A stretch of DNA of 59,773 bases from Anaeramoeba ignava BMAN (GCA_028826165.1 JAPDFW010000035.1:1-59773), one strand, 5' to 3'; counted from the stretch's first letter, positions 1-33,728 are shown. Notes: a model not told the origin generated them from the letters alone. Numbers and translations: made by a program.

Positions 1-235
1 TTTGCTCTGAAATTCTTTCACTTAAATATTCTATTGCTTTTCCATTTTTAAAAAGGAAAATTGTTGCGAAATTGGTTACTAATGAAATTTGTTTAATTTG
101 TTTTTCATTTTCATTTTCATTTTCATTTTCATTTTCATTTTCAAATTTAAATTGAATTGGTTTTGTTATTTTATCTGGTTCATTTTTGAAAAGTTTTGGA
201 TGTTCATCAAAACCAAAAAATAAGCAATCATTCAT
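1..235 (-). CDS. RCC1-repeat/tandem-BTB protein, copy A (5' end only; runs off window)
   Basis: Manual translation from ATG at 235: MNDCLFFGFDEHPKLFKNEPDKITKPIQFKFENENE...KQIKQIS, the same N-terminus as the other copies. Confidence 0.85.
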   Translation of the reverse strand, partial: MNDCLFFGFDEHPKLFKNEPDKITKPIQFKFENENENENENENEKQIKQISLVTNFATIFLFKNGKAIEYLSERISEQ

Positions 236-279
236 TTTTGAAAATGAAAAAATAAAAAAATGAAAAAAATAATTTTTGA

Positions 280-1330
280 ATTTTAATTTTAATTTTAATT
301 TTAATTTTAATTTTAATTTTAATTTTAATTTTAATTTTAATTTTAATTTTAATTTTAATTTTGATTTTAATTTTAATTTTAATTTTAATTTTGATTTTAA
401 TTTTGAATTTTAATTTTAATTTTAATTTTAATTTTAATTTTAATTTTAATTTTAAATTTTAAAATTTTAATTTTGATTTTGATTTTGATTTTTGATTTTA
501 ATTTTGATTTTGAATTTAATTTTAATTTTGATTTTGATTTTAATTTTAATTTTAATTTTGATTTTGATTTTAATTTTAATTTTATTTTTAATTTTGATTT
601 TGATTTTAATTTTAATTTTTAATTTTAATTTTATTATAATTTTAATTTTAATTTTAATTTGATTTATTTTTAATTTTAATTTTATTTTTAATTTTGATTT
701 TAATTTTAATTTTGAATTTTATTTTTAATTTTAATTTTAATTTTAATTTTAAATTTTGATTTTGATTTTAATTTTTAATTTAAATTTTAATTTTAATTTT
801 AATTTTAATTTTAATTTTAATTTTAATTTTTTAATTTTAATTTTAATTTTAATTTTGATTTTAATTTTAAATTTTAATTTTAATTTTAAATTTTAAATTT
901 TGATTTTGATTTTAATTTAAATTTTAATTTTAATTTTAATTTTAATTTTAATTTTAATTTTGATTTTGATTTTAATTTTAATTTTAATTTTAATTTTAAT
1001 TTTAATTTTAATTTTAATTTTTATTTTTAATTTTAATTTTAATTTTAATTTTAATTTTAATTTTGATTTTGATTTTGATTTTAATTTTGATTTTGATTTT
1101 GATTTTAATTTTAATTTTAATTTTAATTTTGATTTTGATTTTAATTTTGATTTTAATTTTGATTTTGATTTTTGATTTTAATTTTAATTTTAATTTTAAT
1201 TTTAATTTTGATTTTAATTTTAATTTTAATTTTAATTTTTGATTTTTAATTTTAATTTTAATTTTAATTTTAATTTTAATTTTAATTTTAATTTTAATTT
1301 TAATTTTGATTTTTAATTTTAATTTTAATT
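280..1330. repeat. (TTTTAA/TTTTGA)n hexamer microsatellite spacer
   Basis: Directly visible; it explains the ILILIL/FNFNFD ORFs. Confidence 0.95.
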
Positions 1331-3092
1331 TTAATTTTGATTATTAAATTTGTTAATTAATAAATCAAATAAATTTGGATTTGTTTGATTTAATTGAAAA
1401 TAATCAATTCCTCTTTCTAATTCTTGAATAATTTCTTGTGTAATTTGAATTTCATCTTTAATTTGATTTGAATAAATCCAATATTCAAATATTTGAAATG
1501 ATTTATTACTTAATTCACTATAATCTGTAACTTTATTAGATTTATCATTTGTTACAGATAAAAACATTCCTCGATATAATTCACTTCTCATTATTAATAT
1601 TAATTTAGGAAATTTATATTGTTTTTCTTTTCTTTCAATTATAAAATCTTTTTCATTTTCATTTTCATTTAAATAAATTCTTTTCATTGTTTCTTCAATT
1701 TTTTCATTTAAATTTATAATTTCTTTAATTTCAGAATATAATTTTGGATTTATTTTGGAATTGTTTGAATAAATCATTTCAAATATTTGATTTGATTCTT
1801 TAATTGATTTTTGAAATAATTTCTTGAAGTTTTTCAATTTGATTTTCATTTTGATTTTGATTTAATCTATATTTCAATATTAATTTATGAGCTTCAATTA
1901 TTTCTCCATTTTCTGTTTTAAATGAAATATCACAAAATTCTTTTCTTTCAAATAATTTTATCAAATCTTCTTCAAGATTGGAAAAAGAAAGGAGAATAAT
2001 AAAGAAATGATTTGTTATATCCACAAGAAATATGATAATTAGAAATATCTTCATTAAATCTTAATTTAGGAAGTTCAATTTGAATTGGAATTGATTTATC
2101 ATTTGTATCTTCAGTTCTTAATTGACCATATCTATTACTTCCAAATCCAATTAGTTTTGAATTAGAAGTTAAAATCAAAGTATGAGAATGTCCAACAGAA
2201 AAATCAAGAATATTATCATTTTCAAATAAAGATGATTTGATTTCAGTAAATTCATAAGTATCATCTTCATTTTTGTCAAGTCCATTGAATATATAATCTC
2301 CACATGAATAAAGTTTTCTTTTTGGATTTTCATTTTGATCTTCTTCAATCAACATTATTGAATGATTAAATCCACATTGAATATCAATTATTTTGCCTTT
2401 TGGAATATTTTGGATTTTGGTTAATTTTTGGATTTTTTCTTCTTTTCTTGATTCTCCTAATCCAACTTGGCCATGGTAATTGAATCCGCATCCAAATAAT
2501 TCTTGATTTGAATTTAAAAGAAAAACACAATCAGAACAATTTCCTGAAAATATTTTAGAAACATTTTTCATCATTAAAATTGGTTTTTCTGTTTTTTTAA
2601 GTGTTTCAGAATCAAAACCAAGTTGACCATATGATTTGAACCAATTCCATAAACATTTTGATTTGAAGTTAATAAGTAAATTGAATATCCAGAAACAATA
2701 TCTTGAATTATTCTATCATTTTTATCTTCAATTAATGATGAAATATTGATAAATTCTTTTGTATTATTTGGATTAATATTTCTTCCTTTGGCAAATACAT
2801 TTCCTTCTTTTGTTAAAATAGCTTCATTTTCAAAACCAACAGATACTTTTTGAATATTTTCTTCAATTTGGATTTTTGAAGGATTTTCATTTGAATTATT
2901 TTCATTTAAATATTCTATTGCTTTTCCATTTTTAAAAAGGAAAATTGTTGAAAAATAACCTGATGAAATTTGTTTAATTTGTTTTTCATTTTCATTTTCA
3001 AATTTAAATTGAATTGATTTTTTTATTGAATTTTGTTTATTTTTGAAAAGTTTTGGGAATAGATTTAAACCAAAAAATATAATTTCATTCAT
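1331..3092 (-). pseudogene. RCC1-BTB-BTB copy B, three frameshifts (~2630, ~1985, ~1805); pseudogene or assembly indels
   Basis: ORFs 2574-3092, 1972-2574, 1800-2054 and 1331-1849 tile one full paralogue; GxNxxGQLG RCC1 motifs; FCDISF..IEAHKLIL BTB. Confidence 0.8.
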
Positions 3093-3196
3093 TTTTGAAA
3101 AGAAAAAAATGAAAAAAATAATTTTGAATTTTAATTTTAATTTTAATTTTAATTTTGATTTTAATTTTAATTTTGATTTTGATTTTAATTTTAATT

Positions 3197-4972
3197 TTAA
3201 TTTTTAAATTTGTTAATTAATAAATCAAATAAATTTGGATTTGTTTGATTTAATTGAAAATAATCAATTCCTCTTTCTAATTCTTGAATAATTTCTTGTG
3301 TAATTTGAATTTCATCTTTAATTTGATTTGAATAAATCCAATATTCAAATATTTGAAATGATTTATTACTTAATTCACTATAATCTGTAACTTTATTAGA
3401 TTTATCTTCAGTTACAGATAAAAACATTCCTCGATATAATTCACTTCTCATTATTAATATTAATTTTGGAAATTTATATTGTTTTTCTTTTCTTTCAATT
3501 ATAAAATCTTTTTCATTTTCATTTTCATTTAAATAAATTCTTTTCATTGTTTCTTCAATTTTTTCATTTGAATTTATAATTTCTTTAATTTCAGAATATA
3601 ATTTTGGATTTATAATTCTGTTTGAATAAATCATTTCAAATATTTGATTTGATTCTTTAATTGATTTTTTTGAAATAATTTCTTGAAGTTTTTCAATTTC
3701 ATTTTCATTTTCATCTTGATTTAATCTATATTTCAATATTAATTTATGAGCTTCAATTATTTCTCCATTTTTGGTTTTAAATGAAATATCACAAAATTCT
3801 TTTCTTTCAAATAATTTTATCAAATCTTCTTCAAGATTGGAAAAAGAAGAAAGAAAAGGAGAATAATAAAGAAATGATTTTCGATATCCACAAGAAATAT
3901 GATAATTATAAATTTCTTCATTAAATCTTAATTTAGGAAGTTCAATTTGAATTGGAATTGATTGGTTATTCGTATCTCTAGTTCCTAATTGATAATATTG
4001 ATTTAATCCAAATCCAATTAATTTTGAATTGGATGTTAAAATCAAAGTATGATCTCTTCCAACAGAAAAATCAAGAATAATATTATCATTTTCAAATAAA
4101 GATGATTTGATTTCAGTAAATTCATAAGTATCTTCATCTTCATTTTTGCCAAGTCCATTGTATCCAGAGCCTCCACATGAATAAAGTTTTCTTTTTGGAT
4201 TTTCATTTTCATTTTCAATCAACATTATTGAATGAAATAATCCACATTGAATATCAATTATTTTGCCTTTTGGAATATTTTGGATTTTGGTTAATTTATT
4301 AATTCGAATTTCTTTTGTTGATTTTCCTAATCCAAGTTGACCATGATTATTCCATCCACATCCAAATAATTCTTGATTTGAATTTAAAAGAAAAATATGA
4401 TATGAGATGATTCCTGAAAATATTTTAGAAACATTTTTCATCATTAAAATTGGTTTTTCTGTTTTTGGAAGTGTTTCAGAATCAAAACCAAGTTGACAAT
4501 TTTCATTTGAACCAATTCCATAAAAATTTTGATTTGAAGTTAATAAGTAAATTGATTGAGCAGAACAACCGATATCTTCAATTATTCTATCATTTTTATC
4601 TTCAATTAATGATGAAATATTGATAAATTCTTTTCGATTATTTGGATTAATATTTCTTCCTTTTGCAAATACATTTCCTTCTTTTGTTAAAATAGCTTTA
4701 TTTTGATAACTAACAGTTACTTTTTGAATATTTTCTTCAATTTGGATTTTTTCAGGATTTTGTTTTGAATCATTTTCACTTAAATATTCTATTGCTTTTC
4801 CATTTTCAAAAAGGAAAATTGCTCCAGAATAACTTGTTGAAATTTGTTTAATTTGTTTTTCATTTTCATTTTCATTTTCAAATTTAAATTGAATTGGTTT
4901 TGTTATTTCATTTGGTTTATTTTTGAAAAGTTTTGGGAATAGATTTAAACCAAAAAATATAATTTCATTCAT
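3197..4972 (-). CDS. RCC1-repeat/tandem-BTB protein, copy C (591 aa, intact)
   Basis: RCC1 blades (GWNNHGQLGLG, QCGLFHSIML, SVGRDHTLIL); two BTB-like domains (FCDISF..AHKLILKYR; KDFII..KLILIMRSELYRGMF). Confidence 0.92.
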   Translation of the reverse strand: MNEIIFFGLNLFPKLFKNKPNEITKPIQFKFENENENEKQIKQISTSYSGAIFLFENGKAIEYLSENDSKQNPEKIQIEENIQKVTVSYQNKAILTKEGNVFAKGRNINPNNRKEFINISSLIEDKNDRIIEDIGCSAQSIYLLTSNQNFYGIGSNENCQLGFDSETLPKTEKPILMMKNVSKIFSGIISYHIFLLNSNQELFGCGWNNHGQLGLGKSTKEIRINKLTKIQNIPKGKIIDIQCGLFHSIMLIENENENPKRKLYSCGGSGYNGLGKNEDEDTYEFTEIKSSLFENDNIILDFSVGRDHTLILTSNSKLIGFGLNQYYQLGTRDTNNQSIPIQIELPKLRFNEEIYNYHISCGYRKSFLYYSPFLSSFSNLEEDLIKLFERKEFCDISFKTKNGEIIEAHKLILKYRLNQDENENEIEKLQEIISKKSIKESNQIFEMIYSNRIINPKLYSEIKEIINSNEKIEETMKRIYLNENENEKDFIIERKEKQYKFPKLILIMRSELYRGMFLSVTEDKSNKVTDYSELSNKSFQIFEYWIYSNQIKDEIQITQEIIQELERGIDYFQLNQTNPNLFDLLINKFKN

Positions 4973-5009
4973 TTTTGAAAAGAAAAAAAATGAAAAAATG
5001 ATTTTTGAA

Positions 5010-5636: not shown

Positions 5637-7406
5637 TTATTTTTGATTATTAAATTTGTTAATTAATAAATCAAATAAATTTGGATATGTTTGATTTAAT
5701 TGAAAATAATCAATTCCTGTTTCTAATTCATCAATTGTTTCTTTTGTAATTTGAATTTCATCTTTAATTTGATTTGAATAAATCCAATATTCAAATATTT
5801 GAAATGATTTATTACTTAATTCACTATAATCTGTAACTTTATTAGATTTATCTTCAGTTACAGATAAAAACATTCCTCGATATAATTCACTTCTCATTAT
5901 TAATATTAATTTAGGAAATTTATATTGTTTTTCTTTTCTTTCAATTATAAAATCTTTTTCATTTTCATTTTCATTTTCATTTAAATAAATTCTTTTCATT
6001 GTTTCTTCAATTTTTTCATTTGAATTTATAATTTCTTTAATTTCAGAATATAATTTTGGATTTATTTTGGAATTATTTGAATAAATCATTTCAAATATTT
6101 GATTTGATTCTTTAATTGATTTTTTTGAAATAATTTCTTGAAGTTTTTCAATTTGATTTTCATTTTGATTTAATCTATATTTCAATATTAATTTATGAGC
6201 TTCAATTATTTCTCCATTTTCGGTTTTAAATGAAATATCACAAAATTCTTTTCTTTCAAATAATTTTATCAAATCTTCTTCAAGATTGGAAAAAGAAGAA
6301 AGAAAAGGAGAATAATAAATAAATGATTTTTGATATCCACAAGAAATATGATAATTAGAAATATTTTCATTAAATCTTAATTTAGGAAGTTCAATTTGAA
6401 TTGGAATTAATTTATCATCTGTATTTTCAGTTCCTAATTGACCATATCTGTTATTTCCAAATCCTATTAATTTTGGTTTGGATGTTAAAATCAAAGTATG
6501 ATAACTTCCAACAGAAAAATCAAGAATAATATCATCATTTTCAAATAAAGATGATTTAATTTCAATAAATTCATAAGCATTTCCATTTTTGTCAAGTCCA
6601 TTAGATTGATAAGCTCCACATGAATAAAGTTTTCTTTTTGGATTTTCATTTTCATTTTCAATTAACATTATTGAATGAAATAATCCACATTGAATATCAA
6701 TTATTTTACCTTTTGGAATATTTTGGATTTGGGTTAATTTATTAATTTGAAATTCTTTTGTTGATTTTCCTAATCCAAGTTGACCATGATTATTCCATCC
6801 ACATCCAAATAATTCTTGATTTGAATTTAAAAGAAAAATATGATATGAGATGATTCCTGAAAATATTTTAGAAACATTTTTCATCATTAAAATTGGTTTT
6901 TCTGTTTTTTGAAGTGTTTCAGAATCAAAACCAAGTTGACAATTTCTATTTGAACCAATTCCATAAACATTTTGATTTGAAGTTAATAAGTAAATTGATT
7001 GAGCAGAACAACCGATATCTTGAATTATTCTATCATTTGTATCTTCAATTAATGATGAAATATTGATAAATTCTTTTGAATTATTTGGATTAATATTTCT
7101 TCCTTTGGCAAATACATTTCCTTCTATTGTTAAAATAGCTTTATTTTGATAACTAACAGTTACTTTTTGAATATTTTCAATTTGAATTTCTTTAGGATTT
7201 TGTTTTGAATTATTTTCATTTAAATATTCTATTGCTTTTCCATTTTCAAAAAGGAAAATTGCTCCAGAATAACTTGTTGAAATTTGTTTAATTTGTTTTT
7301 CATTTTCATTTTCAAATTTAAATTGAATTGGTTTTGTTATCTCATTTGGTTCATTTTTGAAAAGTTTTGGTTTTTCATTTAAACCAAAAAATAAGCAATC
7401 ATTCAT
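5637..7406 (-). CDS. RCC1-BTB-BTB copy D (589 aa, intact)
   Basis: Full-length ORF paralogous to copy C. Confidence 0.92.
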   Translation of the reverse strand: MNDCLFFGLNEKPKLFKNEPNEITKPIQFKFENENEKQIKQISTSYSGAIFLFENGKAIEYLNENNSKQNPKEIQIENIQKVTVSYQNKAILTIEGNVFAKGRNINPNNSKEFINISSLIEDTNDRIIQDIGCSAQSIYLLTSNQNVYGIGSNRNCQLGFDSETLQKTEKPILMMKNVSKIFSGIISYHIFLLNSNQELFGCGWNNHGQLGLGKSTKEFQINKLTQIQNIPKGKIIDIQCGLFHSIMLIENENENPKRKLYSCGAYQSNGLDKNGNAYEFIEIKSSLFENDDIILDFSVGSYHTLILTSKPKLIGFGNNRYGQLGTENTDDKLIPIQIELPKLRFNENISNYHISCGYQKSFIYYSPFLSSFSNLEEDLIKLFERKEFCDISFKTENGEIIEAHKLILKYRLNQNENQIEKLQEIISKKSIKESNQIFEMIYSNNSKINPKLYSEIKEIINSNEKIEETMKRIYLNENENENEKDFIIERKEKQYKFPKLILIMRSELYRGMFLSVTEDKSNKVTDYSELSNKSFQIFEYWIYSNQIKDEIQITKETIDELETGIDYFQLNQTYPNLFDLLINKFNNQK

Positions 7407-7632: not shown

Positions 7633-9435
7633 TTAATTTTGATTATTAAATTTGTTAATTAATAAATCAAATAAATTTGGATTTGTTTGATTTAATTGAA
7701 AATAATCAATTCCTCTTTCTAATTCTTGAATAATTTCTTGTGTAATTTGAATTTCATCTTTAATTTGATTTGAATAAATCCAATATTCAAATATTTGAAA
7801 TGATTTATTACTTAATTCACTATAATCTGTAACTTTATTAGATTTATCTTCTGTTACAGATAAAAACATTCCTCGATATAATTCACTTCTCATTATTAAT
7901 ATTAATTTTGGAAATTTATATTGTTTTTCTTTTCTTTCAATTATAAAATCTTTTTCATTTTCATTTTCATTTAAATAAATTCTTTTCATTGTTTCTTCAA
8001 TTTTTTCATTTGAATTTATAATTTCTTTAATTTCAGAATATAATTTTGGATTTATTTTGGAATTGTTTGAATAAATCATTTCAAATATTTGATTTGATTC
8101 TTTAATTGATTTTTTTGAAATAATTTCTTGAAGTTTTTCAATTTGATTTTCAATTTCAATTTGATTTAATCTATATTTCAATATTAATTTATGAGCTTCA
8201 ATTATTGAACCATTTTCTGTTTTAAATGAAATATCACAAAATTCTTTTCTTCTAAATAGTTTTATCAAATCTTCTTCAAGATTGGAAAAAGAAGAAAGAG
8301 AATAATAAAGAAATGATTTGTAATCACCACAAGAAACATGATAATTAGAAATATCTTCATTAAATCTTAATTTAGGAAGTTCAATTTGAATTGGAATTGA
8401 TTGATTATTTGTATCTCCAGTTCCTAATTGACCATGAGAATTATCTCCAAATCCAATTAATTTTGAATTAGAAGTTAAAATAAAAGTATGTTCAAACCCA
8501 ACAGAAAAATCAAGAATATCATCATTTTCAAATAAAGATGATTTGATTTCAGTAAATTCATAAGTATTTTCATCTTTGCCAAGTCCATTATATCGATGAT
8601 ATCCACATGAATAAAGTTTTCTTTTTGGATTTTCATTTTCATTTTCATTTTCATTTTCAATCAGCATTATTGAATGGAAATATCCACATTGAATATCAAT
8701 TATTTTACCTTTTGGAATATTTTGGATTTTGGTTAGATTTTGTATTGTTGCTTTTCCTAATTTTCTTGATTCTCCTAATCCAAGTTGACCATAAAAATTA
8801 TATCCACATTCAAATAATTCTTGATTTGAATTTAAAAGAAAAACAAAAGCTGAAGTATTTCCTGAAAATATTTTAGAAACATTTTTCATCATTAAAATTG
8901 GTTTTTCTGTTTTTTTAAGTGTTTCAGAATCAAAACCAAGTTGACAAAATTGATTTGAACCAATTCCATAAGCATTTTGATTTGAAGTTAATAAGTAAAT
9001 TGAACTATCTCCAGAAATAACATCTTCAATTATTCTATCATTTTTATCTTCAATTAATGATGAAATATTGATAAATTTATTTGGATTTTTTGGATTAATA
9101 TTTCTTCCTTTGGCAAATACATTTCCTTCTTTTGTTAAAATAGCTTCATTTCAACCAACAGTTACTTTTTGAATATTTTCTTCAATTTGGATTTTTTCAG
9201 GATTTTGATTTGAATCGTTTTCATTTAAATATTCTATTGCTTTTCCATTTTTAAAAAGGAAAATTGTTGAAAATAAACTTGATGAAATTTGTTTAATTTG
9301 TTTTTCATTTTCATTTTCATTTTCATTTTCATTTTGATTTTCAAATTTAAATTGAATTGGTTTTGTTATTGTATTTGATTCATTTTTGAAAAGAATTGGT
9401 TCTTGATTTGAACCAAAAAATAAAATTTCATTCAT
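7633..9435 (-). pseudogene. RCC1-BTB-BTB copy E, in-frame TGA at 9151-9153
   Basis: ORFs 9151-9435 and 7633-8892 are in the same frame, and the intervening sequence is homologous coding sequence. Confidence 0.8.
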
Positions 9436-13339: not shown

Positions 13340-13501
13340 TTTTGAAAAGGAAAAAAATGAAATCAAATTTCTTTTTCTTTAATTTTTTTTTTTGGAAATC
13401 AAAACCAAAACCAAAATCAAAATCAAAATCAGAATCAAATTCAAATCAGATTTAAAATTAAAATTAGGGAAAATAAGGAAAAAATGCAAAAAATTTCGTT
13501 T

Positions 13502-14318: not shown

Positions 14319-17202
14319 ATGAAAATTTGGCAAATTATTCAAGAAAATCAAATAGAAAAATTACAAAAAATTGAATTTATTCCAAAAAATCAATTTAAAA
14401 AAAATGGAAAACCAATTTTACATTTTGCAATAGAAAAAAAAATTCCAAAACAAATGATTGAACTTTTAATTAAGAAAGGAGCAAAAACAAATTCAACTGA
14501 TAAATTTGGAAGAAATTCTTTACATTTTGCTTGCAAATTTAATTCTAATTTTGAAATTGTTAAATATTTAGTTGAAAAAAAAGTTCAAATCAACTCAAAA
14601 GATAATTCAAATCAAACACCTTTACATTTTGCTTGTGAAAATAAATCAAATTTTGAAATTATCAAATATTTAGTTGAAAAAGGTGCTGATATAAATGCAA
14701 AATCAAATTCAAATCAAACACCTTTACACTTTGCTTGCAAATTTAATTCAAATTTTGAAATTATCAAATATTTAGTTGAAAAAGGTTGTGATATAAATAC
14801 AAAAGATAATTCAAATCAAACACCTTTGCATTTTGCTTGTGAAAATAAATCAAATTTTGAAATTGTTAAATATTTAGTTGAAAAAGGTGCTGATATAAAT
14901 GCAAAATCAAATTCAAATCAAACACCTTTACACTTTGCTTGCAAATTTAATTCAAATTTTGAAATTGTTAAATATTTAGTTGAAAAAGGTTCTGATATAA
15001 ATGCAAAATCAAATTCAAATCAAACACCTTTACATTTTGCTTGTGAAAATAAATCAAATTTTGAAATTGTTAAATATTTAGTTGAAAAAAGTGCTGATAT
15101 AAATGAAAAAACATTTTGGAATCAAACACCTTTGCACTGTGCTTGTGAATTTAACCCAACTTTGAAACTCATCAAATTTTTAGTGGAAAAAGGTGCTGAT
15201 GTAAATACAAAAAATATCAGAAATGAAACACCTTTGCATCTAATTTGTGAGCTTAATCCAAATTTGGAACTCATCAGATTTTTAGTGGAAAATGGATCTT
15301 ATATCAACCAAAAAGAAAGGAATAAAAACCAAGCTCCTTTGCATTTAATTTGTCAAAATTCAAAGATTGATAATAAAATTATGTTTGAAATTATCATATA
15401 TTTAGTTGAAAAAGGTGCTGATGTTAATTCCAAAAAAAATAATGATCAAACTCCTTTACATTTAATTTGCCAAAATAGAAATATTGAGCAAAAAATGTTA
15501 TTTAAAATTATCATGTATTTGGTTGAAAAAGGTGCTGATATTAATTCTAAGACAAGAGATGATAAATACACAATGATAAATTTTATTTATCAAATTCATT
15601 TAAGCATTCCGCTTGATTTTTTCCGATATTTGATTGAAAAAGGACTTGATGTGAATGAGAGGACAAACAACAATGAAACCGTTTTGCATTTTGTTTGTCA
15701 ATACCAACAAGAAAATGCATATGAAATAATCCAGTTATTGATTGATAAAGGATGCGATATGAATGCGAGAACTAATATTAGCCAAATCCCTCTAGATTTT
15801 GTTTGCCAATACCAACATGGAAATGCACTTGAAATTATCAAGTTATTTATTGAAAAAGAAAAAGATATTGATAATAAAAAAACAGATTATGGAAGGGCTT
15901 TGCAGTTAGTCTGTGAATATAAACATAAAGACTTATTTGAAATTGTTAAATTACTCATAGAAGCAGGTGCAGATGTGAATTTTGCAGGTGAAGATCTTCT
16001 TTCAGCTCTTCATTTTCTTTGTCGTAATTATGAAAGAAAGTTTCATAATACAATAAGATTATTAATTGAAAACGGAGCTGATGTAAATCTCAAAGGAGGG
16101 CATTTCAATGAAACTTGTTTACATTTCATTTTTTATACACGAAAAAACCAAGATATGAAAAAATTAGTCAAATTGTTGATCCAAAATGGTGCTAATATTC
16201 ATCAAGTCGATGATCAAGAGATCGCACCTCTTGATTTGATTATTTCAAATAATGACTTAAATTCTTTAAAATTGTTGTTATTGCATGATCCTTATCTGAT
16301 TTTCCTTTTAGATATACTAATAATTAAAGAAGACCTAATGGAAATGTTTATCCAAATTTATTCAATCAATCAAGATTTCCACAACTCATTTAAATCCAAT
16401 GAAAATTATTTTGATCTCACAATTTTATCCAACGATTTATTCACGTTTCATGTTCATAGACAAATTTTACTAATGAGATTCGATAATAATACTTCTATTC
16501 TCCAAAATTTTTTCAGTATTTGTAAACAAAAACCAAAAGAAATTGTTCAACTTGCATTAAATTTTCTTTATACTGGATTTAATGATTTTGGAAGAATTAT
16601 TGAAAAACTATCCGTTTTGACTGAATATAAAATCCGACACAAAGATATTGAAAAAAAATTTGAAAAACAACAAATTACATGGAATAAATTCCAAAAACAA
16701 AAAGCAGAACAGTATATATTTGAAAGATATAGAAGTAAACCAAATATACGATGAAGTTGCACTGAATAACACGAGAGTAGAAGAATTCTTCAAGGAAATG
16801 GGATTTGATTCAAATTGGATCGAATCCAAAAAAGGAAGAAAAGGATTAATAAAAGATTTGCATCAATTATATCAACAACAAGAAACAAAAGATTTCACAA
16901 TAATTATTGAAGAAAAAGAAATTAAGGTTCATAAATTAATATTAATAATAAGAAGTGAGTTATTCAAAGGAATGTTTTTACTAAATGTCCAAGATTCAAC
17001 AAATAGAGTTCATGATTATTCAAAAAAATCATTTGAAACTTTAGATCAATTTATTTATTTTCTTTATCATGATAAATTTGATAAATCCAAAACATTGAAT
17101 AAAAAAATAATCGAAGAATTTGAGGATGTGAAAGATTATTATCAATTAAATCAAAATTCGATTTTGGATTTGATTTTACTTGATTTGATTCAAGAAATTT
17201 GA
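14319..17202 (+). CDS. Ankyrin-repeat + tandem BTB protein; one frameshift in the 16648-16754 overlap
   Basis: Many TPLHFAC..LVEKGADIN repeats; BTB1 FDLTIL..FHVHRQILLMR; BTB2 KDFTII..KVHKLILIIRSELFKGMF in ORF 16648-17202. Confidence 0.88.
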
Positions 17203-17274: not shown

Positions 17275-19037
17275 ATGAATGAAATTTTGTTTTTTGGAAA
17301 GAATAAATTACCAACAATTTTAAAAAATGAAGCAGACATAATAACAAAACCAATTCAATTTAAATTTGAAAATGAAAAACAAATTAAACAAATTTCAACA
17401 GGAAGATTTGCAACAATTTTCCTTTTTGAAAATGGAAAAGCAATAGAATATTTAAAAAATTCAAAACAAAATCCTTCAAAAATCCAAATTGAAGAAAATA
17501 TTCAAAAAGTAACTGTTGGCGAACAAAATGAAGCTATTTTAACAATAGAAGGAAATGTATTTGCCAAAGGAAGAGATATTAATCCAAAAAATCCAAATGA
17601 ATTTACCAATATTTCATCATTAATTGAAGATATAAATGATAGAATAATTCAAGATATTGTTTCTTCATCTTATTCAATTTATTTATTAACTTCAAATCAA
17701 AATGCTTATGGAATTGGTTCAAATCAATTTGGTCAACTTGGTTTTAAATCATTGTTCAAAACAGAAAAACCAATTTTGATAATGAAAAATGTTTCTAAAA
17801 TATTTTCAGGAGGTGATTCAAATCATGCTTTTCTTTTAAATTCAAATCAAGAATTATTTGGATGTGGCAATACTGAATTTGGTCAACTTGGATTAGGAGA
17901 ATCAATAAATGAAGAAATTCAAATCAAGAAATTAACTGAAAAAGGAAATTTTCCAGAAGGCAAAATAATTGATATTCAATCTGGAGAATTGTATTCAGTA
18001 ATGTTGATTGAATTTAAAGCAAAAAGAAAGCTTTATTCAAGTGGATGCTATCTAAATAATGGTCTTTGCAAAAATCATGATACTTATGAATTTACTGAAC
18101 TCAAATCATCTTTATTTGAAAATGAAGATAATATTGTTAAAATTTCTGTTGGAAGAGGTCATACTTTGATTTTAACTTCTAATTCAAAATTAATTGGATT
18201 TGGAAATAATGATTATGGTCAATTAGGAACTGGAGATCTTAATTATCAATTGACTCCTATTCAAATTGAACTTCCTAAATTAAGATTTAATGAAAATATT
18301 TCTAATTATCATCTTTCTTGTGGTGATTTCACTTCATTTCTTTATTGTTCTCTTTCTTCTTTTTCCAATCTTGAAGAAGATTCAAATCAACTCATTTGAA
18401 AGAAAAGAATTTTGTGATATTTCATTTAAATCTCATAAAATAATTAGAAAAAAAAGCTTCAAAAATCAAAATTTAAATTAAAATTAAATCAAAATCAAAA
18501 TCAAAATCAAAATCAAAATCAAAATCAAAATCAAATTGAAAAACTTCAAGAAATTATTTCAAAAAAATCAATTAAAGATTCAAATCAAATATTTGAAATA
18601 ATTTATTCAAACAGAATAATAAATTCAAAATTATATTCTGAAATTAAAGAAATTATAAATTTAAATGAAAAAATTGAAGAAACAATGAAAAGAATTTATT
18701 TAAATGAAAATGAAAATGATTTTATAATTGAAAGAAAAGAAAAAGAATATAAATTTCCAAAATTAATATTAATAATGAGAAGTGAATTATATCGAGGAAT
18801 GTTTTTATCTGTTACAGAAGATAAATCCTAATAAAGTTAGAGATTATAGTGAATTAAGTAATAAATCATTTCCAAATATTAGAATATTGGATTTATTCAA
18901 ATCAAATTAAAGATGGAATTCAAATTACACAAGAAATAATTAATGAAATTAAAATTGGAATTGATTATTTTCAATTAAATCAAACAAATCCAAATTTATT
19001 TGATTTATTAATTAACAAATTTAATAATCAAAATTAA
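17275..19037 (+). pseudogene. RCC1-BTB-BTB copy H; RCC1 part intact (374 aa), BTB part disrupted by indels/stops
   Basis: ORF 17275-18399 followed by degraded but recognisable BTB sequence ending FNNQN* at 19037. Confidence 0.8.
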
Positions 19038-19270: not shown

Positions 19271-21062
19271 ATGAATGATTGTTTATTTTTTGGTTTAAAT
19301 AAAACACCAAAACTTTTCAAAAATGAACCAGAAATAATAACACCACCAATTCAATTTAAATTTGAAAATGAAAATGAAAATGAAAATGAAAATGAAAATG
19401 AAAATGAAAAACAAATTAAACAAATTTCAACAGGTTATTTTTCAACAATTTTCCTTTTCAAAAATGGAAAAGCAATATAATATTTAAATGAAAATGATTC
19501 AAATCAAAATCCTTCAAAAATCAAAATTGAAGAAAATATTCAAAAAGTAACTGTTGGTTATCGAAATGAAGCTATTTTAACAATAGAAGGAAATGTATTT
19601 GCCAAAGGATATTATATTAATCCAAATAATCCAAATGAATTTATCAATATTTCATCATTAATTGAAGATAAAAATGATAGAGTAATTCAAGATGTCGTTT
19701 CTGGAGCTTATTCAATTTACTTATTAACTTCAAATCAAAATGTTTATGGAATTGGTTCAAATCAAGATGGTCAACTTGGTTTTGATTCTGAAACACTTAA
19801 AGAAACAGAAAAACCAATTTTAATGATGAAAAATGTTTCTAAAATATTTTCAGGAAATTCTTCAATTCATGTTTTTCTTTTAAATTCAAATCAAGAATTA
19901 TTTGTATGTGGATGGAATAATTATAGTCAACTTGGATTAGGAGAATCAAGAAAAGAATCAATAATTCATAAATTAACCAAAATCCAAAATATTCCAAAAG
20001 GCAAAATAATTGATATTCAATCTGGAAGTATTCATTCAATAATGCTGATTGAAATTGAAATTGAAAATCAAAATCCAAAAAGAAAACTTTATTCATGTGG
20101 TTATTATCAATCTAATGGACTTGGCAAATATGGAAATACTTATGAATTTACTGAAATCAAATCATCTTTATTTGAAAATGATAATATTCTTGATTTTTCT
20201 GTTGGAAATGAACATAGTTTGATTTTAACTTCCAAATTCAAAATTAATTGGATTTGGATTAAATCAATATGGTCAATTAGGAACTGGAGATATAAATGAT
20301 CAATTAATTCCAATTCAAATTGAACTTCCTAAATTAAGATTTAATGAAGATATTTCTAATTATCATGTTTCTTGTGGATATTTCAAATCATTTCTTTATT
20401 ATTCTCTTCCTTCTTTTTCCAATCTTGAAGAAGATTTGATAAAACTATTTAGAAGAAAAGAATTTTGTGATATTTCATTTAAAACCAAAAATGGAGAAAT
20501 AATTTCAGCTCATAAATTAATATTGAAATATAGATTAAATCAAAATCAAAATCAAAATGAAAAACTTCAAGAAATTATTTCAAAAAAATCAATTAAAGAA
20601 TCAAATCAAATATTTGAAATGATTTATTCAAACAGAATAATAAATCCAAAATTATATTCTGAAATTAAAGAAATTATAAATTCAAATGAAAAAATTGAAG
20701 AAACAATGAAAAGAATTTATTTAAATGAAAATGAAAATGAAAAAGATTTTATAATTGAAAGAAAAGAAAAAGAATATAAATTTCCAAAATTAATATTAAT
20801 AATGAGAAGTGAATTATATCGAGGAATGTTTTTATCTGTAACAGAAGATAAATCAAATAAAGTTAGAGATTATAGTGAATTAAGTAATAAATCATTTCAA
20901 ATATTTGAATATTGGATTTATTCAAATCAAATTAAAGATGAAATTCAAATTACACAAGAAATAATTGATGAAATTGAAACTGGAATTGATTATTTTCAAT
21001 TAAATCAAACAAATCCAAATTTATTTGATTTATTAATTAACAAATTTAATAATCAAAATTAA
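19271..21062 (+). pseudogene. RCC1-BTB-BTB copy I; GAA>TAA nonsense at 19478 and frameshift ~20235
   Basis: ORFs 19271-19480, 19823-20299 and 20436-21062 plus the homologous gaps. Confidence 0.82.
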
Positions 21063-21308: not shown

Positions 21309-23109
21309 ATGAATGATTGTTTATTTTTGGTTTAAAATGAACTTTTAAAATGAACCATATCAAATAAAAAAACCAATTCAATTTAAATTTGAAAATGAAA
21401 ATGAAAATGAAAATGAAAAACAAATTAAGCAAATTTCATCAAGTTTATTTTCAACAATTTTCCTTTTTAAAAATGGAAAAGCAATAGAATATTTAAATGA
21501 AAATGATTCAAATGAAAATCCTTCAAAAATCAAAATTGAAAATATTCAAAAAATATCTATTGGTCATGATAATATAGCTATTTTAACAATAGAAGGAAAT
21601 GTATTTGCAAAAGGAAAAAATATTAATCCAAAAAATCCAAAACAATTTATCAATATTTCATCATTAATTGAAGATAAAAATGATAGAATAATTCAAGATG
21701 TCGTTTCTGGAGCTTGTTCAATTTACTTATTAACTTCAAATCAAAATGCTTATGGAATTGGTTCAAATCAAGATTGTCAACTTGGCTCTGATTATATAAC
21801 ATTTCCAAAAACAAAAAAACCAATTTTAATGATGAAAAATGTTTCTAAAATATTTTCAGGAAATACTTCAAAACATGTTTTTCTTTTAAATTCAAATCAA
21901 GAATTATTTGGATGCGGATATAATTTTCACAGTAAACTTGGATTAGGAGAATCAAGAAAAGAAGTAAAAATCAGAAAATTAACCAAAATCCAAAATATTC
22001 CAAAAGGAAAAATAATTGATATTCAATGTGGATTTACTTTTTCAATAATGCTGATTGAAATTGAAATTGAAATTGAAATTGAAATTGAAATTGAAATTGA
22101 AAATCAAAATCCAAAAAGAAAACTTTATTCATGTGGAAATTATCAATCTAATGGACTTGGCAAAAATGATACTTATGAATTTACTGAAATCAAATCATCT
22201 TTATTTGAAAATGATAATATTCTTGATTTTTCTGTTGGAAATAGACATACTTTGATTTTAACAATAAAAGGGAAATTAATTGGATTTGGGAATAATTCAT
22301 CTGGTCAATTAGGAACTGGAGATACAAAAAATCAATTAATTCCAATTCAAATTGAACTTCCTAAATTAAGATTTAATGAAGATATTTCCAATTATCATAT
22401 TTATTGTGAAAATGAAAAATCATTTATTTATTATTCTCCTCCTTCTTTTTCCAATCTTGAAGAAGATTTGATAAAATTATTTAGAAGAAAAGAATTTTGT
22501 GATATTTCATTTAAAACAAAAAATGGAGAAATAATCAAAGCTCATAAATTAATTTTGAAATATAGATTAAATCAAAATCAAAATCAAAATCAAATTGAAA
22601 AACTTCAAGAAATTATTTCAAAAAAATCAATTAAAGAATCAAATCAAATATTTGAAATGATTTATTCAAACAATTCCAAAATAAATTCAAAATTATATTT
22701 TGAAATTAAAGAAATTATAAATTCAAATGAAAAAATTGAAGAAACAATGAAAAGAATTTATTTAAATGAAAATGAAAATGAAAATGAAAAAGATTTTATA
22801 ATTGAAAGAAAAGAAAAGAAATATAAATTTCCTAAATTAATATTAATAATGAGAAGTGAATTATATCGAGGAATGTTTTTATCTGTAACTGAAGATAAAT
22901 CTAATAAAGTTAGAGATTATAGTGAATTAAGTAATAAATCATTTCAAATATTTGAATATTGGATTTATTCAAATCAAATTAAAGATGAAATTCAAATTAC
23001 ACAAGAAATAATTGATGAAATTGAAATTGGAATTGATTATTTTCAATTAAATCAAACAAATCCAAATTTATTTGATTTATTAATTAATAAATTTAATAAT
23101 CAAAATTAA
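21309..23109 (+). pseudogene. RCC1-BTB-BTB copy J; indels in the first ~60 nt, remainder open
   Basis: ATG AAT GAT TGT at 21309; ORF 21829-23109 with upstream homologous sequence. Confidence 0.78.
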
Positions 23110-23499
23110 AATTAAAATTAAAATTAAAATTAAAATTAAAATTAAAATTAAAATTAAAATTAAAATTAAAATTAAAATTAAAATCAAAATTAAAATTAAA
23201 ATTAAAATCAAAATTAAAATTCAGATCTAAATTAAAATTAGCTGGATTTATTTATTAAACAATTTAACCATTGAAATTGAAAATAAAAATTAAAATTAAA
23301 ATTTAAAATTAAAATTAAAATGTTATTTAAAATCAAAATTAAAAATCAATTTCAAAAATCTTTTTTTATTTTTTCATTTTTTTTTAATTGTAATTTTTTT
23401 TATTATTTTTGTAATTTTTTTTTTTAATTGATCAAAATAATTTAAAAACAAAATTTGATCTTTGAGCAAAATCTTGAAAGAAACAAACAAATAGAAATC

Positions 23500-25588
23500 A
23501 TGAATCAAAAACAAGAAATTTTATTTTTTGGTTCTAATAAAACAACAAAATTTTATAACAAAAAAATACAAAAAATCACAAAACCAACACAAATTTATTT
23601 AGAAAATGAAAATGAAAATGAAAATGAAAATGAAAAACAAATTAAACAAATTTCTTCAAGTTATTTTTCAACAATTTTTCTTTTTAAAAATGGAAAAGCA
23701 ATAGAATATTTAAAAAAATCAAAAAAAAATCCACAAAAAATTCAAATTGAAAATATTCAAATTGAAAATATCCAAAAAGTAACTGTTGGTTTTCAAAATG
23801 AAGCTATTTTAACAATAGAAGGAAATGTATTTGCCAAAAGGAAAAAATATTAATCCAAAAAATCCAAAACAATTTATCAATATTTCATCATTAATTGAAG
23901 ATACAAATGATAGAATAATTAAAGATATTGTTTCTGGTTCTCAATCAATTTACTTATTAACTTCAAATCAAAATGCTTATGGAATTGGTTCAAATTATTT
24001 TGGCCAACTTGGTTCTAAAACAATTCAAAAAACACAAAAACCAATTTTAATGATGAAAAATGTTTCTAAAATATTTTCAGGAATTTATTCAAGTTCTGTT
24101 TTTCTTTTAAATTCAAATCAAGAATTATTTGGATGTGGCAGTAATTATTGGGGTCAACTTGGATTAGGAAATGAGGGATATTTTCAAGAAAGATTAACCC
24201 AAAATCCAAAATATTCCAAAAGGCAAAATAATTGATATTCAATCTGGATATGATTATTCAGTAATGTTGATTGAAAATGAAGAAGAAGGAGATTCAGATC
24301 CAAATTCAGATCCAAAATCAAATTCAAAATCAAAATCAAATTCAAATTCAAATTCAAATTCAAATTCAAATTCAAATTTAAATCAAAATCATAATCAAAT
24401 TCAAAATCAAAATCAAAATCAAAATCAAAATCAAAATCAAAATCAAAATCAAAATCAAAATCAAAATCAAAATCAAAATCAAAATCAAAATCAAAATCAA
24501 AATCAAAATCAAAATCAAAATCAAAATCAAAATCAAAATCCAAAAAGAAAACTTTATTCATGTGGTTATTATCAATATAATGGACTTGGCAAAAACGAAA
24601 ATACTAAAGAGTTTACTGAAATCAAATTATCTTTATTTGAAAATGATGATAATATTCTTGATTTTTCTGTTGGTTATGCTCATACTTTGATTTTAACAAT
24701 AAAAGGGAAATTAATTGGATTTGGATTAAATGATTGTGGTCAATTAGGAACTAGATATACAAATGATCAATTAATTCCAATTCAAATTGAACTTCGTAGC
24801 TTATTGTTTGATATTTCCGATTATCGTCTTTCTTGTGGTGATTTTAATTCATTTCTTTATTATTCTCCTTCTATTCCTTCTTTTTCCAATCTTGAAGAAG
24901 ATTTGATAAAACTATTTCTAAGAAAAGAATTTTGTAATGTTTCATTTAAAACCGAAAATGGAGAAATAATTGAAGCTCATAAATTAATATTGAAATATAG
25001 ATTAAAAGATTATGAAAATCGAAATTGAAAAACTTCAAGAAATTATTTCAAAAAAATCAATTAAAGAATCAAATCAAATATTTGAAATGATTTATTCAAA
25101 CAATTCCAAAATAAATCCAATATTATATTCTGAAATTAAAGAAATTATAAATTCAAATGAAAAAATTGAAGAAACAATGAAAAGAATTTATTTAAATGAA
25201 AATGAAAATGAAAAAGATTTTATTAATTGAAAGAAAAGAAAAACAATATAAATTTCCTAAATTAATATTAATAATGAGAAGTGAATTATATCGAGGAATG
25301 TTTTTATCTGTAACTGAAGATAAATCCAATAAAGTTAGAGATTATAGTGAATTAAGTAATAAATCATTTCAAATATTTGAATATTGGATTTATTCAAATC
25401 AAATTAAAGAAGAAATTCAAATTACAAAAGAAATAATTGAAGAACTTGAAATTGGAATTGATTATTTTCAATTAAATCAAACAAAATCCAATTTATTATC
25501 TTGTTCAATTGATCAATATATCAAGAAAAAAACTCAAAAAAAATTCAAACAAAAAAAAGAAAAAAAAGGAAGTTGTTTTATTTTTTAA
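23500..25588 (+). CDS. RCC1-BTB-BTB copy K with SN/QN repeat insert and polybasic-CaaX-like tail; several frameshifts
   Basis: ORFs 23455-23853, 23825-24235, 24264-25028, 25012-25230 and 25196-25588 tile one gene; it ends KKFKQKKEKKGSCFIF*. Confidence 0.75.
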
Positions 25589-33690: not shown

Positions 33691-33728
33691 TTTAATCCTT
33701 TTTTTCATTTTTTTAAAAATAAAAATAA

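What the first reader, a model, noticed from the sequence alone, without database searches (positions are those of the whole stretch)
1..25588. Mosaic, loop-hypervariable RCC1-BTB array: candidate diversifying repertoire of Cullin-3 substrate receptors
Seen: 11 paralogues whose scaffold and BTB halves are almost identical in DNA, while changes cluster in the same short motifs of each blade. Examples: ISS/T-GYFS/SYSG/SLFS/SDFS/GRFA; GFNYH/GWNNH/GYNFY/GNNEY/GSNYW-GQ; QCG-FN/LF/YF/LH/MF/FT; SVG-HS/RD/SY/FE/DY/NE/NR/YA-H; SCG-YNK/YRK/YQK/DYK/YST/DFT. These positions are rich in aromatic and charged residues. Established: BTB + propeller proteins (KLHL, RCBTB, IBTK) are Cul3 substrate adaptors, and these motifs form propeller loops. 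Inference: an antibody-like intracellular recognition and degradation repertoire under diversifying selection, for example against symbiont, pathogen or TE proteins.
Basis: partly seen in the sequence, partly recalled or inferred. Interest (0 to 1): 0.82.

Follow-up and report, generated by a model that had tools for sequence, protein, structure and literature searches.

The report
Hypervariable RCC1-propeller BTB receptor family
This stretch of the anaerobic amoeba Anaeramoeba ignava holds one partly decayed cluster of a gene family of more than 1,100 copies, in which about 40 residues on one face of an RCC1 beta-propeller vary far faster than silent sites while a double BTB tail stays almost constant. 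This is the signature of a germline repertoire of binding proteins, probably ubiquitin-ligase adaptors.

Summary
The window (a whole contig of Anaeramoeba ignava) holds 11 RCC1-propeller-BTB-BTB paralogues: 4 intact, 6 broken and 1 cut by the contig end.

- **Where the differences lie.** Nucleotide diversity is 0.48 in 38-40 hypervariable (HV) codons against 0.054 in the scaffold.
- **Family size.** Two conserved 29-mers occur 1,144 and 1,259 times in the 42.8 Mb genome, about 5% of it.
- **Selection.** In 31 intact genes, dN at HV codons is 0.82. Scaffold dS is 0.085, a ratio of 9.6 (CI 7.5-12.5). Against the HV codons' own dS, omega is 2.6 (CI 1.9-3.4).
- **Location on the fold.** 34 HV sites lie in loops of one propeller face and none in loops of the other (Fisher 2e-10). 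They align with the Trp/Arg interface positions of UVR8.
- **Composition.** HV sites are rich in Tyr, Trp, Arg and Asp.
- **Mosaicism.** Scaffold polymorphisms are in linkage equilibrium, so the genes are mosaics made by gene conversion.
- **Relatives.** The closest relatives elsewhere, in A. flamelloides, are only 31-35% identical.
- **Not shown.** A Cul3-type cullin gene exists, but Cul3 binding, expression and any immune role were not tested, and nothing indicates somatic diversification.

This is a new variant of a known kind: adaptively expanded ubiquitin-ligase adaptor families. First readers flagged the same family in 71 other windows of this genome. The genome paper does not mention it.

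The parts
16..235 (-). c0: first ~200 nt (N-terminus) of a family copy, cut by the start of the contig
   Evidence: BLASTN 79% over query nt 1-199
1337..3092 (-). c1: full-length copy, broken. 1-nt deletion near 2632 and 2-nt deletions near 1989 and 1812.
   Evidence: At 2631, about 90% of the depth laid there agrees with the assembly, but paralogue contigs may contribute.
3197..4972 (-). c2: intact gene of 591 aa. RCC1 propeller 1-372, BTB1 ~392-481, BTB2 ~488-590.
   Evidence: ORF, Pfam, AF2 models
5637..7406 (-). c3: intact gene of 589 aa, the closest relative of c2 (90% aa)
7639..9435 (-). c4: full-length copy with a single in-frame TGA at codon 95 (about 9151-9153), otherwise open
9634..11445 (-). 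c5: intact gene of 603 aa
11573..13339 (-). c6: intact gene (ATG at 13339, about 588 aa; the mechanical ORF of 597 aa starts at a TTG at 13366)
14319..17202 (+). Ankyrin-repeat-BTB-BTB gene between the two oppositely oriented sub-arrays. It reads as two overlapping ORFs whose frames differ; the ORF overlap (16648-16754) includes an A8 run.
   Evidence: Pfam Ank and BTB; sequence read; its BTB2 is 68% identical in DNA to the family's
17275..19031 (+). c7: broken copy. Propeller open for 374 aa; four 1-2-nt insertions (18384, 18434, 18827, 18872) in the BTB half. One of the two most diverged copies.
19271..21056 (+). c8: broken copy. Stop at codon 70 (about 19478-19480) and a 1-nt insertion near 20234.
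21309..23109 (+). c9: copy with an 11-nt deletion near 21342, just after the start codon. The remaining 585 codons are open; the longest ATG ORF has 426 aa and lacks blades 1-3.
23509..25588 (+). c10: broken copy. 1-nt insertion at 23836, 5-nt deletion at 25020, 1-nt insertion at 25223, and a long N/Q/S microsatellite expansion in the blade-5 'ENENE' loop. It ends in a polybasic stretch plus CFIF (CaaX-like).

Best explanation
The region is one tandem cluster of a species-specific family of about 1,100-1,260 genes in Anaeramoeba ignava. The cluster has two sub-arrays transcribed away from a central ankyrin-BTB gene.

Each gene is intronless and encodes a seven-bladed RCC1-like beta-propeller followed by two BTB domains.

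The family evolves as one recombining pool. Frequent short-tract gene conversion between tandem and dispersed copies keeps the framework and the BTB tail nearly uniform. Selection for amino-acid novelty keeps about 40 positions different in every member. These positions sit in the s2-s3 hairpins and the s4-s1 loops of all blades, which together form one face of the propeller.

The most likely function is a germline repertoire of target-binding receptors. The variable Tyr/Trp/Arg/Asp-rich face binds diverse protein ligands. The constant BTB module dimerises and hands the bound target to a common effector, most probably a Cul3-type ubiquitin ligase.

Shown here: family size, fold, location of the variable sites, dN above dS, mosaicism, species specificity, pseudogene content, and presence of a Cul3-type cullin gene.

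Inferred: ligand binding, Cul3 recruitment, degradation of targets, and what the targets are (proteins of prey or symbiont bacteria, viruses or mobile elements, or non-self recognition).
For: **Identity and size**
- More than 115 annotated A. ignava proteins are 79-90% identical over the full length.
- 29-mers from BTB2 and from the propeller occur 1,259 and 1,144 times in the genome; the reversed control occurs 0 times.
- 72 of the 75 best six-frame matches have no stop.

**Fold**
- Pfam finds RCC1 and BTB.
- AF2 model 2 has pLDDT 89.
- Foldseek gives TM 0.74-0.80 to RCC1, HERC2 RLDs and RPGR, and 0.66-0.71 to UVR8.

**Hypervariability**
- In 115 proteins, entropy is near 0 at most sites and at least 2 bits at 38-40 sites.
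- All 115 loop signatures are distinct, and the patches are nearly independent of one another.

**Selection**
- With HV sites defined on 90 independent proteins, dN(HV) is 0.82 and dS(scaffold) is 0.085, a ratio of 9.6 (CI 7.5-12.5).
- Omega against the HV codons' own dS is 2.56 (CI 1.92-3.39).
- pN(HV) exceeds pS(scaffold) in all 465 pairs.
- Scaffold omega is 0.2-0.4.
- Fourfold scaffold sites differ at 0.13 against an equilibrium of 0.48, so silent sites are not saturated.

**Location**
- 34 HV sites lie in face-Y loops and 0 in face-X loops (Fisher 2e-10). The other 6 sit at strand ends on the Y side.
- The HV sites align with the GW-R-HT and GW-x-x-G positions of UVR8.

**Composition**
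- Tyr is 19% (6 times the scaffold). Trp, Arg and Asp are up; Ile, Leu and Gly are down.

**Mosaicism**
- PHI test p < 0.001.
- 66% of pairs of biallelic scaffold sites show all four gametes, and r2 is about 0.035 beyond 5 nt.
- Window copies are no closer to each other than to copies on other contigs.
- Silent diversity rises 3-fold next to HV codons and decays within about 4 codons.

**Effector side**
- One cullin gene (G000:C58) matches human CUL3 best.
- BTB2 aligns to the BTB of the CUL3 adaptor KBTBD4.
- Human RCBTB1, with the same domain order, is described as a putative CUL3 adaptor (PMC4974088).
Against: - Cul3 binding is untested. The phi-x-E contact motif aligns to T521-E/N522-D523, and residue 522 is dimorphic (E or N) in the family.
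- There is no BACK/3-box. The protein ends with the last BTB helix.
- No ligand is known.
- Expression of the main family is not shown. None of the main-family entries listed or looked up comes from the EukProt transcriptome, although divergent RCC1-BTB relatives do. The one non-genome run has no recorded library type.
- Six of the ten full-length copies in this window are broken.
- The parsimony counts on one tree are inflated by recombination. The NG86 method is approximate in a genome with 3% G+C at third positions.
Confidence: 0.6

Rival explanations
1. The family is a diversified binder repertoire that does not work through Cul3. The BTB domains serve only for dimerisation or oligomerisation, and the proteins act by sequestration, scaffolding or self/non-self recognition, as the hypervariable WD40 propellers of fungal HNWD/NLR proteins do.
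For: - The hypervariability, one-face location and concerted evolution fit any binder repertoire.
- The phi-x-E motif is not canonical and there is no 3-box.
- About 10% of members, and c10 here, end in a polybasic CaaX-like tail that suggests membrane targeting.
- The closest evolutionary parallel, Podospora HNWD, is not a ubiquitin ligase (PMC1805685 and PMC2873952).
Against: - The BTB tail is the most strongly conserved part (omega 0.2).
- BTB joined to a propeller is the classic Cul3-adaptor design.
- A Cul3-type cullin is present.
Confidence: 0.22
2. The propellers are regulators (exchange factors or binders) of the greatly expanded small GTPases of Anaeramoeba. The variable face tracks the diversity of Rab-type partners.
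For: - RCC1-like domains act on Ran, Rab and Arf GTPases (established knowledge).
- Many members carry automatic names such as 'claret' or 'RCC1-like G exchanging factor'.
- The genome paper reports large Rab and TBC expansions (PMC11550330).
Against: - More than 1,100 members with 115 of 115 distinct loop signatures and near-saturated variation far exceed any GTPase complement.
- Partners that are conserved cellular proteins should impose purifying selection, not diversifying selection.
- The high-identity family is absent from the sister species, which also has the expansions.
Confidence: 0.07
3. The family is a functionless or selfish amplification (genomic drift). The loops simply lack constraint, and gene conversion homogenises the rest.
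For: - The copy number is huge, the genes are intronless and sit in tandem arrays, and 6 of 10 copies here are broken.
- Highly diverged patches could block conversion tracts and so persist without selection.
Against: - dN at HV sites is about 10 times the scaffold dS, and 2.6 times their own dS. Neutral sites cannot exceed dS.
- The 31 intact genes analysed have no stop at the ~38 HV codons. About 12% stops per codon would be expected from third-position base composition.
- Residue composition at HV sites is strongly non-neutral.
- The scaffold is under purifying selection.
- 72 of the 75 best genomic matches are open.
Confidence: 0.06
4. Diversity is generated by a programmed or somatic mechanism (targeted hypermutation or cassette conversion in single cells), making the system antibody-like in the literal sense.
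For: - Silent diversity is raised 3-fold right next to HV codons.
- Pseudogenes that stay similar to intact genes could serve as conversion donors.
Against: - All the variation seen is germline variation between paralogues in one assembly.
- Local silent diversity is equally explained by old patch alleles resisting conversion.
- The laid contigs were too short to show variants.
Confidence: 0.03

Closest known systems
MATH-BTB (BATH) and F-box adaptor families of nematodes and grasses (Thomas 2006, Genome Res 16:1017, cited in PMC4091423; PMC12951971)
   Same: Lineage-specific, tandemly clustered, pseudogene-rich expansions of ubiquitin-ligase adaptors. The ligase-binding domain is conserved and positive selection is concentrated in the substrate-binding domain. 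They were proposed to target foreign proteins.
   Different: - The variable domain here is an RCC1 propeller, not MATH or FTH.
- The family has more than 1,100 near-identical members, against tens to a few hundred diverged ones.
- Variation is confined to about 40 sites on one face.
- There is pervasive concerted evolution.
- The host is a free-living metamonad amoeba.
Podospora anserina HNWD / HET-E, HET-D NLR-like genes (PMC1805685, PMC2873952)
   Same: A beta-propeller whose repeats undergo concerted evolution and exchange, while a few positions per blade on the interaction face are under positive diversifying selection. It is a germline non-self recognition repertoire.
   Different: - Those propellers are WD40, with exchange between repeats, and are attached to NACHT and HET death domains.
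- There are about ten genes, not more than 1,000.
- No BTB domain.
RCBTB1/RCBTB2 and IBtk of animals
   Same: The same domain order, an RCC1-like propeller followed by BTB regions. RCBTB1 is described as a putative CUL3 substrate adaptor (PMC4974088). Automatic names of family members point to these proteins.
   Different: - Those are single-copy conserved genes.
- No animal RCBTB was identified among the full-length relatives whose sources were looked up. All of these were Anaeramoeba, so orthology is not shown.
- BTB1 here lacks the alpha2-alpha3 segment.
UVR8 and other RCC1-like domains (RCC1, HERC2 RLD, RPGR)
   Same: The seven-bladed fold. TM is 0.74-0.80 to RCC1, HERC2 RLDs and RPGR, and 0.66-0.71 to UVR8. 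The HV positions align with the UVR8 GWRHT and GWxxxG positions, which by established knowledge form its dimer and COP1/RUP-binding face.
   Different: In those proteins the surface is fixed for one partner. Here it differs in every paralogue.
BTB-Kelch (KLHL/KBTBD) Cul3 adaptors
   Same: A BTB domain plus a beta-propeller that binds the substrate on the face formed by alternate loops. BTB2 aligns to the KBTBD4 BTB.
   Different: - The propeller comes before the BTB, not after it.
- There is no BACK/3-box.
- There are two BTB regions.
- The propeller is RCC1, not Kelch.

Membership tests
RCC1-like domain (RLD) beta-propeller | Tandem RCC1 repeats recognised by the curated profile | tested here: met
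   PF00415 scores 84-88 bits (cut-off 21.7) and PF13540 scores 72-85 bits (cut-off 22) in all intact copies
RCC1-like domain (RLD) beta-propeller | Seven-bladed propeller fold | tested here: met
   AF2 pLDDT is about 90 over residues 1-372, with 7 repeats of four strands. Foldseek TM is 0.74-0.80 to 1I2M, 1A12, 7Q40, 4L1M and 4JHN.
BTB/POZ domain | Profile match above the curated cut-off, and the core fold | tested here: met
   PF00651 scores 36-44 bits (cut-off 20.5) with two stretches. In model 2, BTB2 (488-590) has the hairpin plus five helices at pLDDT 80-93. BTB1 lacks the alpha2-alpha3 segment, judged from the alignment.
RCBTB / IBtk family | Orthology to animal RCBTB1/2 or IBtk | tested here: inconclusive
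   The architecture matches. All 26 full-length relatives whose sources were looked up are Anaeramoeba proteins. No tree with animal sequences was made.
Cul3 (CRL3) substrate adaptor | A Cul3-type cullin is encoded by the organism | tested here: met
   The largest exon ORF of the G000:C58 cullin matches human CUL3 best (401 bits, against 343 for CUL4B). Other cullins are Cul4-like or Cul1/2-like. Exons were searched singly and not joined.
Cul3 (CRL3) substrate adaptor | phi-x-E contact motif in the BTB alpha3-beta4 loop | tested here: inconclusive
   HMMER aligns T521-E522-D523 to L-K-E of KBTBD4. D523 is invariant. Residue 522 is E in 81 and N in 30 of 115 members.
Cul3 (CRL3) substrate adaptor | 3-box / BACK helices after the BTB | tested here: not met
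   There is no BACK hit in Pfam. The protein ends at the last BTB helix, 581-590 of 591. Many BTB adaptors lack a BACK domain, so this does not exclude binding.
Cul3 (CRL3) substrate adaptor | Physical binding of the BTB to the Cul3 N-terminal domain | not testable with these tools
Adaptively expanded adaptor families (MATH-BTB / F-box type) | Lineage-specific expansion in tandem clusters with pseudogenes | tested here: met
   1,144-1,259 copies. Hits are spaced about 2 kb apart. The sister species has only relatives at 31-35% identity. Six of ten copies here are broken.
Adaptively expanded adaptor families (MATH-BTB / F-box type) | Positive selection confined to the substrate-binding domain | tested here: met
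   dN(HV)/dS(scaffold) is 9.6 and omega(HV) is 2.56. Omega for the low-variability codons of the BTB half is 0.2. The HV sites lie on one propeller face.
Somatically diversified receptors (antibody, VLR type) | Diversity generated in somatic cells by rearrangement, conversion or hypermutation | not tested
   Only germline paralogues were compared. The laid contigs were 60-90 nt unitigs.

The most novel reading that the evidence does not exclude
A unicellular eukaryote runs a germline-encoded intracellular recognition system of more than 1,000 receptors. Hypervariable RCC1 propeller faces are continually reshuffled by gene conversion among intact genes and pseudogene donors. Pairing through the near-identical BTB domains could multiply the number of specificities. 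Bound foreign proteins (from prey or symbiont bacteria, viruses or mobile elements) are marked for Cul3-dependent ubiquitination. This would be a protist counterpart of an immune repertoire.
Probability: 0.2. Interest if true: 0.9.

Novelty: new variant of a known kind. Interest (0 to 1): 0.76.

Why it matters
If the reading holds, about 5% of this genome, and perhaps 8% of its genes, is a single recognition repertoire. It would be among the largest and most sharply hypervariable receptor families known outside vertebrate, plant and nematode immunity, and it sits in a protist that keeps bacterial symbionts in a dedicated compartment.

- It gives a clean natural case of diversifying selection on a defined protein face combined with genome-wide concerted evolution.
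- It is a natural library on an RCC1 scaffold.
- It makes the question of whether free-living protists use diversified ubiquitin-ligase adaptors against foreign proteins directly testable.
- The genome paper's main text does not mention the family.

Tried and rejected
- **Reads.** As the tool advised, I laid the part beside it (1301-5050). All runs are held as contigs that break into 60-90 nt unitigs in this family. They therefore settle neither the lesions nor any ongoing variation. At 2631 and 1988 about 10% of the depth carries the alternative indel state, which may come from paralogues.
- **Expression.** No listed run is on record as RNA. Run X5, from another study, covers the coding bins but has zero depth in the c1-c2 spacer. 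That is suggestive only. The short clusters I looked up were genome-annotation fragments, not transcripts.
- **Flank comparison** to separate a young burst from gene conversion. It was confounded because 400-nt flanks reach into neighbouring copies.
- **First AF2 model** from near-identical paralogues. The BTB half came out below pLDDT 50. This was solved by adding divergent Anaeramoeba relatives.
- **PDB sequence search with the tail.** It returned only weak KBTBD4 hits at E 2e-3.
- **Parsimony (SLAC-like) per-site binomial tests.** They are weak because recombination inflates both kinds of change. I relied on pairwise and class-level estimates instead.
- **Thomas 2006** is not held in the library. 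It is cited through PMC4091423 and from my own knowledge.
- **Rejected origins.** A bacterial or giant-virus origin of the window was considered at first because of the A+T content. It was rejected by the A. ignava protein matches and the spliced SSRP1 gene.

Full report
**What the window is.** The window is a complete 59,773-bp contig (G000:C37) of a genome with about 20% G+C. The best protein matches to its long ORFs are more than 115 annotated proteins of Anaeramoeba ignava, 79-90% identical over the full length. This organism is a free-living anaerobic metamonad amoeba that keeps Desulfobacteraceae symbionts. Its genome paper reports 80.65% A+T and greatly expanded gene families, but its main text has no occurrence of 'BTB' or 'RCC1'. 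The held supplements mention BTB only for another family (PMC11550330).

**The observation.** BLASTN of one intact copy against the window and a MAFFT alignment give 11 copies.
- Seven are on the minus strand: c0, which is cut by the contig start, and c1 to c6.
- Four are on the plus strand: c7 to c10.
- An ankyrin-BTB-BTB gene (14319-17202) lies between the two sub-arrays.

Pfam finds RCC1 repeats and two BTB stretches above the curated cut-offs.

Differences are strongly clustered. Nucleotide diversity among the ten full-length copies is 0.479 in the hypervariable (HV) codons and 0.054 in low-variability codons (p 4e-93). HV codons are 6.4% of codons and hold 31% of all differences. The BTB half is 95-96% identical in DNA and the propeller half 87%.

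Only c2, c3, c5 and c6 are open. The broken copies are as follows.
- c1 has three frameshifts.
- c4 has one TGA.
- c7 has four insertions in the BTB half.
- c8 has a stop and a 1-nt insertion.
- c9 has an 11-nt deletion just after the start.
- c10 has three indels and a long N/Q microsatellite.

**Size and spread of the family.** A 29-mer from BTB2 occurs 1,259 times and a 29-mer from the propeller 1,144 times in the 42.8-Mb genome, allowing up to 2 mismatches. The reversed control occurs 0 times. Hits are typically spaced about 2 kb apart in tandem runs on many contigs. At about 1.8 kb per copy this is roughly 5% of the genome. Of the 75 best six-frame matches, 72 have no stop. The family is therefore mostly intact elsewhere, and this window holds a relatively decayed cluster.

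In a search of 1.84 billion cluster representatives, all full-length relatives whose sources I looked up were Anaeramoeba proteins. Those at 36% identity or more are all from A. ignava and include armadillo-RCC1-BTB fusions. A. flamelloides relatives are only 31-35% identical. The high-identity family is thus specific to A. ignava.

**Hypervariable positions.** In 115 full-length proteins, entropy is close to zero at most positions and at least 2 bits at 38-40 positions. In c2 numbering these are 9, 11, 12, 21, 22, 48, 65, 89, 90, 106, 138, 139, 157, 158, 169, 189, 191, 207, 209, 210, 222, 223, 225, 245, 246, 268-271, 277, 306, 307, 323, 325, 336, 338, 363 and 364.

All 115 proteins have a different combination, and the loop patches are nearly independent of each other. 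Any two paralogues differ at 79% of HV codons on average. Even the tandem neighbours c2 and c3 differ at 18 of 38 HV codons, but at only 10 silent scaffold codons out of 546.

**Selection.** I built a codon alignment of 31 intact genes: the 4 from this window and 27 from other contigs.
- Pairwise Nei-Gojobori estimates give dN 0.81 and dS 0.31 for HV codons.
- Low-variability propeller codons give dN 0.036 and dS 0.094.
- Low-variability BTB codons give dN 0.014 and dS 0.069.
- To avoid circularity I redefined the HV sites on 90 proteins that are not among the 31. This gave dN(HV) 0.82 and dS(low) 0.085, and pN(HV) exceeded pS(low) in all 465 pairs.
- Bootstrapping over codons gives dN(HV)/dS(low) = 9.6 (7.5-12.5) and omega against the HV codons' own dS = 2.56 (1.92-3.39).
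- Third positions are 94% A or T, so twofold sites are bias-limited. Fourfold scaffold sites differ at 0.13 against an equilibrium of 0.48, so silent sites are not saturated and the conclusion stands.

Residues at HV sites are not those expected from base composition. Tyr is 19%. Asp, Arg, Trp, Ser, Glu and Gln are in excess. Ile is 1.8% against 21.5% expected. There are no stops against 12% expected.

**Structure.** An AF2 model built from near-identical paralogues gave a confident propeller but a poor tail. After adding divergent Anaeramoeba relatives, the model reached pLDDT 89 and pTM 0.74. Foldseek matches RCC1, HERC2 RLDs and RPGR at TM 0.74-0.80, and UVR8 at 0.66-0.71.

Each blade has four strands. 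By the meander topology of a propeller, the s2-s3 and s4-s1 loops lie on one face and the s1-s2 and s3-s4 loops on the other.
- 34 HV sites lie in loops of the first face (113 residues).
- None lies in loops of the second face (89 residues). Fisher p is 2e-10.
- The remaining 6 sit at strand ends next to the first face.

The profile alignment to UVR8 puts the 'xxH' HV pairs on the W-R of its GWRHT motifs. It puts the 'GxNxx' HV sites on the W and following residues of its GWxxxG motifs. From the published UVR8 structures (my knowledge), these form the dimer and partner-binding surface.

**Mosaic evolution.**
- The maximum-likelihood tree is star-like.
- The PHI test is significant (p < 0.001).
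- Among 59 biallelic scaffold sites with minor allele count of at least 3, 66% of pairs show all four gametes. Mean r2 is about 0.035 at every distance beyond 5 nt. For example, the two-codon N-terminal forms NEI and NDC, and the tail forms TEDKS, TNDTS, TEDTS and TNDKS, occur in all combinations.
- Scaffold distances within the window (0.053) are no smaller than those to copies on other contigs (0.045).
- Silent diversity is 0.19 at codons adjacent to HV codons. It falls to 0.05-0.07 beyond four codons.

Together these results fit frequent short-tract gene conversion across the whole family, with selection preserving divergent patches. A recent burst plus point mutation alone does not explain the four-gamete pattern.

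**The constant tail.** BTB2 (about 488-590) is a complete core BTB. BTB1 (about 392-481) keeps the N-terminal hairpin, the conserved His and the 'IYsn' helix, but lacks the alpha2-alpha3 segment.

BTB2 aligns to the BTB of KBTBD4, a CUL3 adaptor, at E 2e-3. In that alignment the phi-x-E contact motif corresponds to T521-E/N522-D523. There is no BACK/3-box.

The genome encodes about eight cullin loci. One (G000:C58) matches human CUL3 best. Four are Cul4-like and one is Cul1/2-like. Human RCBTB1, which has the same domain order, is described as a putative CUL3 adaptor (PMC4974088). Cul3 recruitment is therefore plausible, but it was not tested here.

**Comparison with known systems.** The nearest concept is the adaptively evolving MATH-BTB and F-box adaptor families of nematodes and grasses (Thomas 2006, cited in PMC4091423; see also PMC12951971). 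The nearest evolutionary mechanism is that of the Podospora HNWD genes, where propeller repeats undergo concerted evolution with positive selection at a few positions on the interaction face (PMC1805685, PMC2873952).

This family differs in four ways: the scaffold is RCC1, the copy number is far higher, the variation is confined sharply to about 40 sites, and the host lineage is different.

**Limits.**
- Expression of the main family is unproven.
- The public runs are held as contigs that shatter in this family, so neither the lesions nor any ongoing variation could be checked.
- First readers of this scan flagged the same family in 71 other windows of this genome, and none had been followed up.

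Noticed in passing
window 14319-17202 (+): An ankyrin-repeat gene with the same BTB1-BTB2 tail sits at the point where the two sub-arrays diverge. Its two ORFs overlap in different frames; the ORF overlap (16648-16754) includes an A8 run. The cause may be a frameshift, an assembly error or a small intron. The genome seems to reuse one double-BTB module on at least three binding scaffolds: RCC1, ankyrin and, in P0124/P0125/P0127, armadillo plus RCC1.
   Followed up: partly
window 25196-25588 (+), and 11 of 115 family proteins: c10 ends in a polybasic stretch followed by CFIF. About 10% of family members end in a CaaX-like box such as CLIF, so a subset may be prenylated and membrane-bound.
   Followed up: partly
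c2 residues 520-525 (window about 3398-3415, -): The loop that aligns to the Cul3-contact phi-x-E motif is dimorphic in the family. The counts are VTEDKS 63, VTNDTS 22, VTEDTS 18 and VTNDKS 8. The two tail types might differ in effector binding.
   Followed up: no
window 52077-54971 (-) and 55189-58047 (+): Two divergently oriented paralogues encode FG-GAP-repeat / fibronectin-III membrane proteins. They are 96% identical over the central ~480 aligned residues (the fibronectin-III region) but only 67% identical in the N-terminal FG-GAP propeller. This is a second case of a variable propeller on a homogenised remainder.
   Followed up: partly
window 58539-59309 (-): A divergent RCC1-repeat ORF with a BTB-like continuation lies at the other end of the contig. 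It is not a member of the high-identity family.
   Followed up: partly
window 31225-38702 (+): ORF fragments of Mutator-like transposases (weak PF20700 hit at 37830-38702), apparently decayed, lie next to the array region.
   Followed up: partly
window 25993-28788 (-): An SSRP1/POB3 (FACT subunit) gene is split by A+T-rich introns and carries SK and NQ microsatellite tracts. It shows that ordinary genes here are spliced, whereas the family copies are intronless.
   Followed up: partly
window 1-235, and many contig starts: The contig begins inside a family copy, and many other contigs have family hits within the first few kb. The arrays seem to break the assembly, so the copy number may be underestimated.
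   Followed up: no
window 24264-24560 and 5064-5224: There are long codon-phased microsatellites: an N/Q/S run inserted in a propeller loop of c10, and an (ATT/ATC)-type run in the c2-c3 spacer. The 'ENENE' loop between s3 and s4 of blade 5 varies in length among copies by slippage, not by substitution.
   Followed up: no
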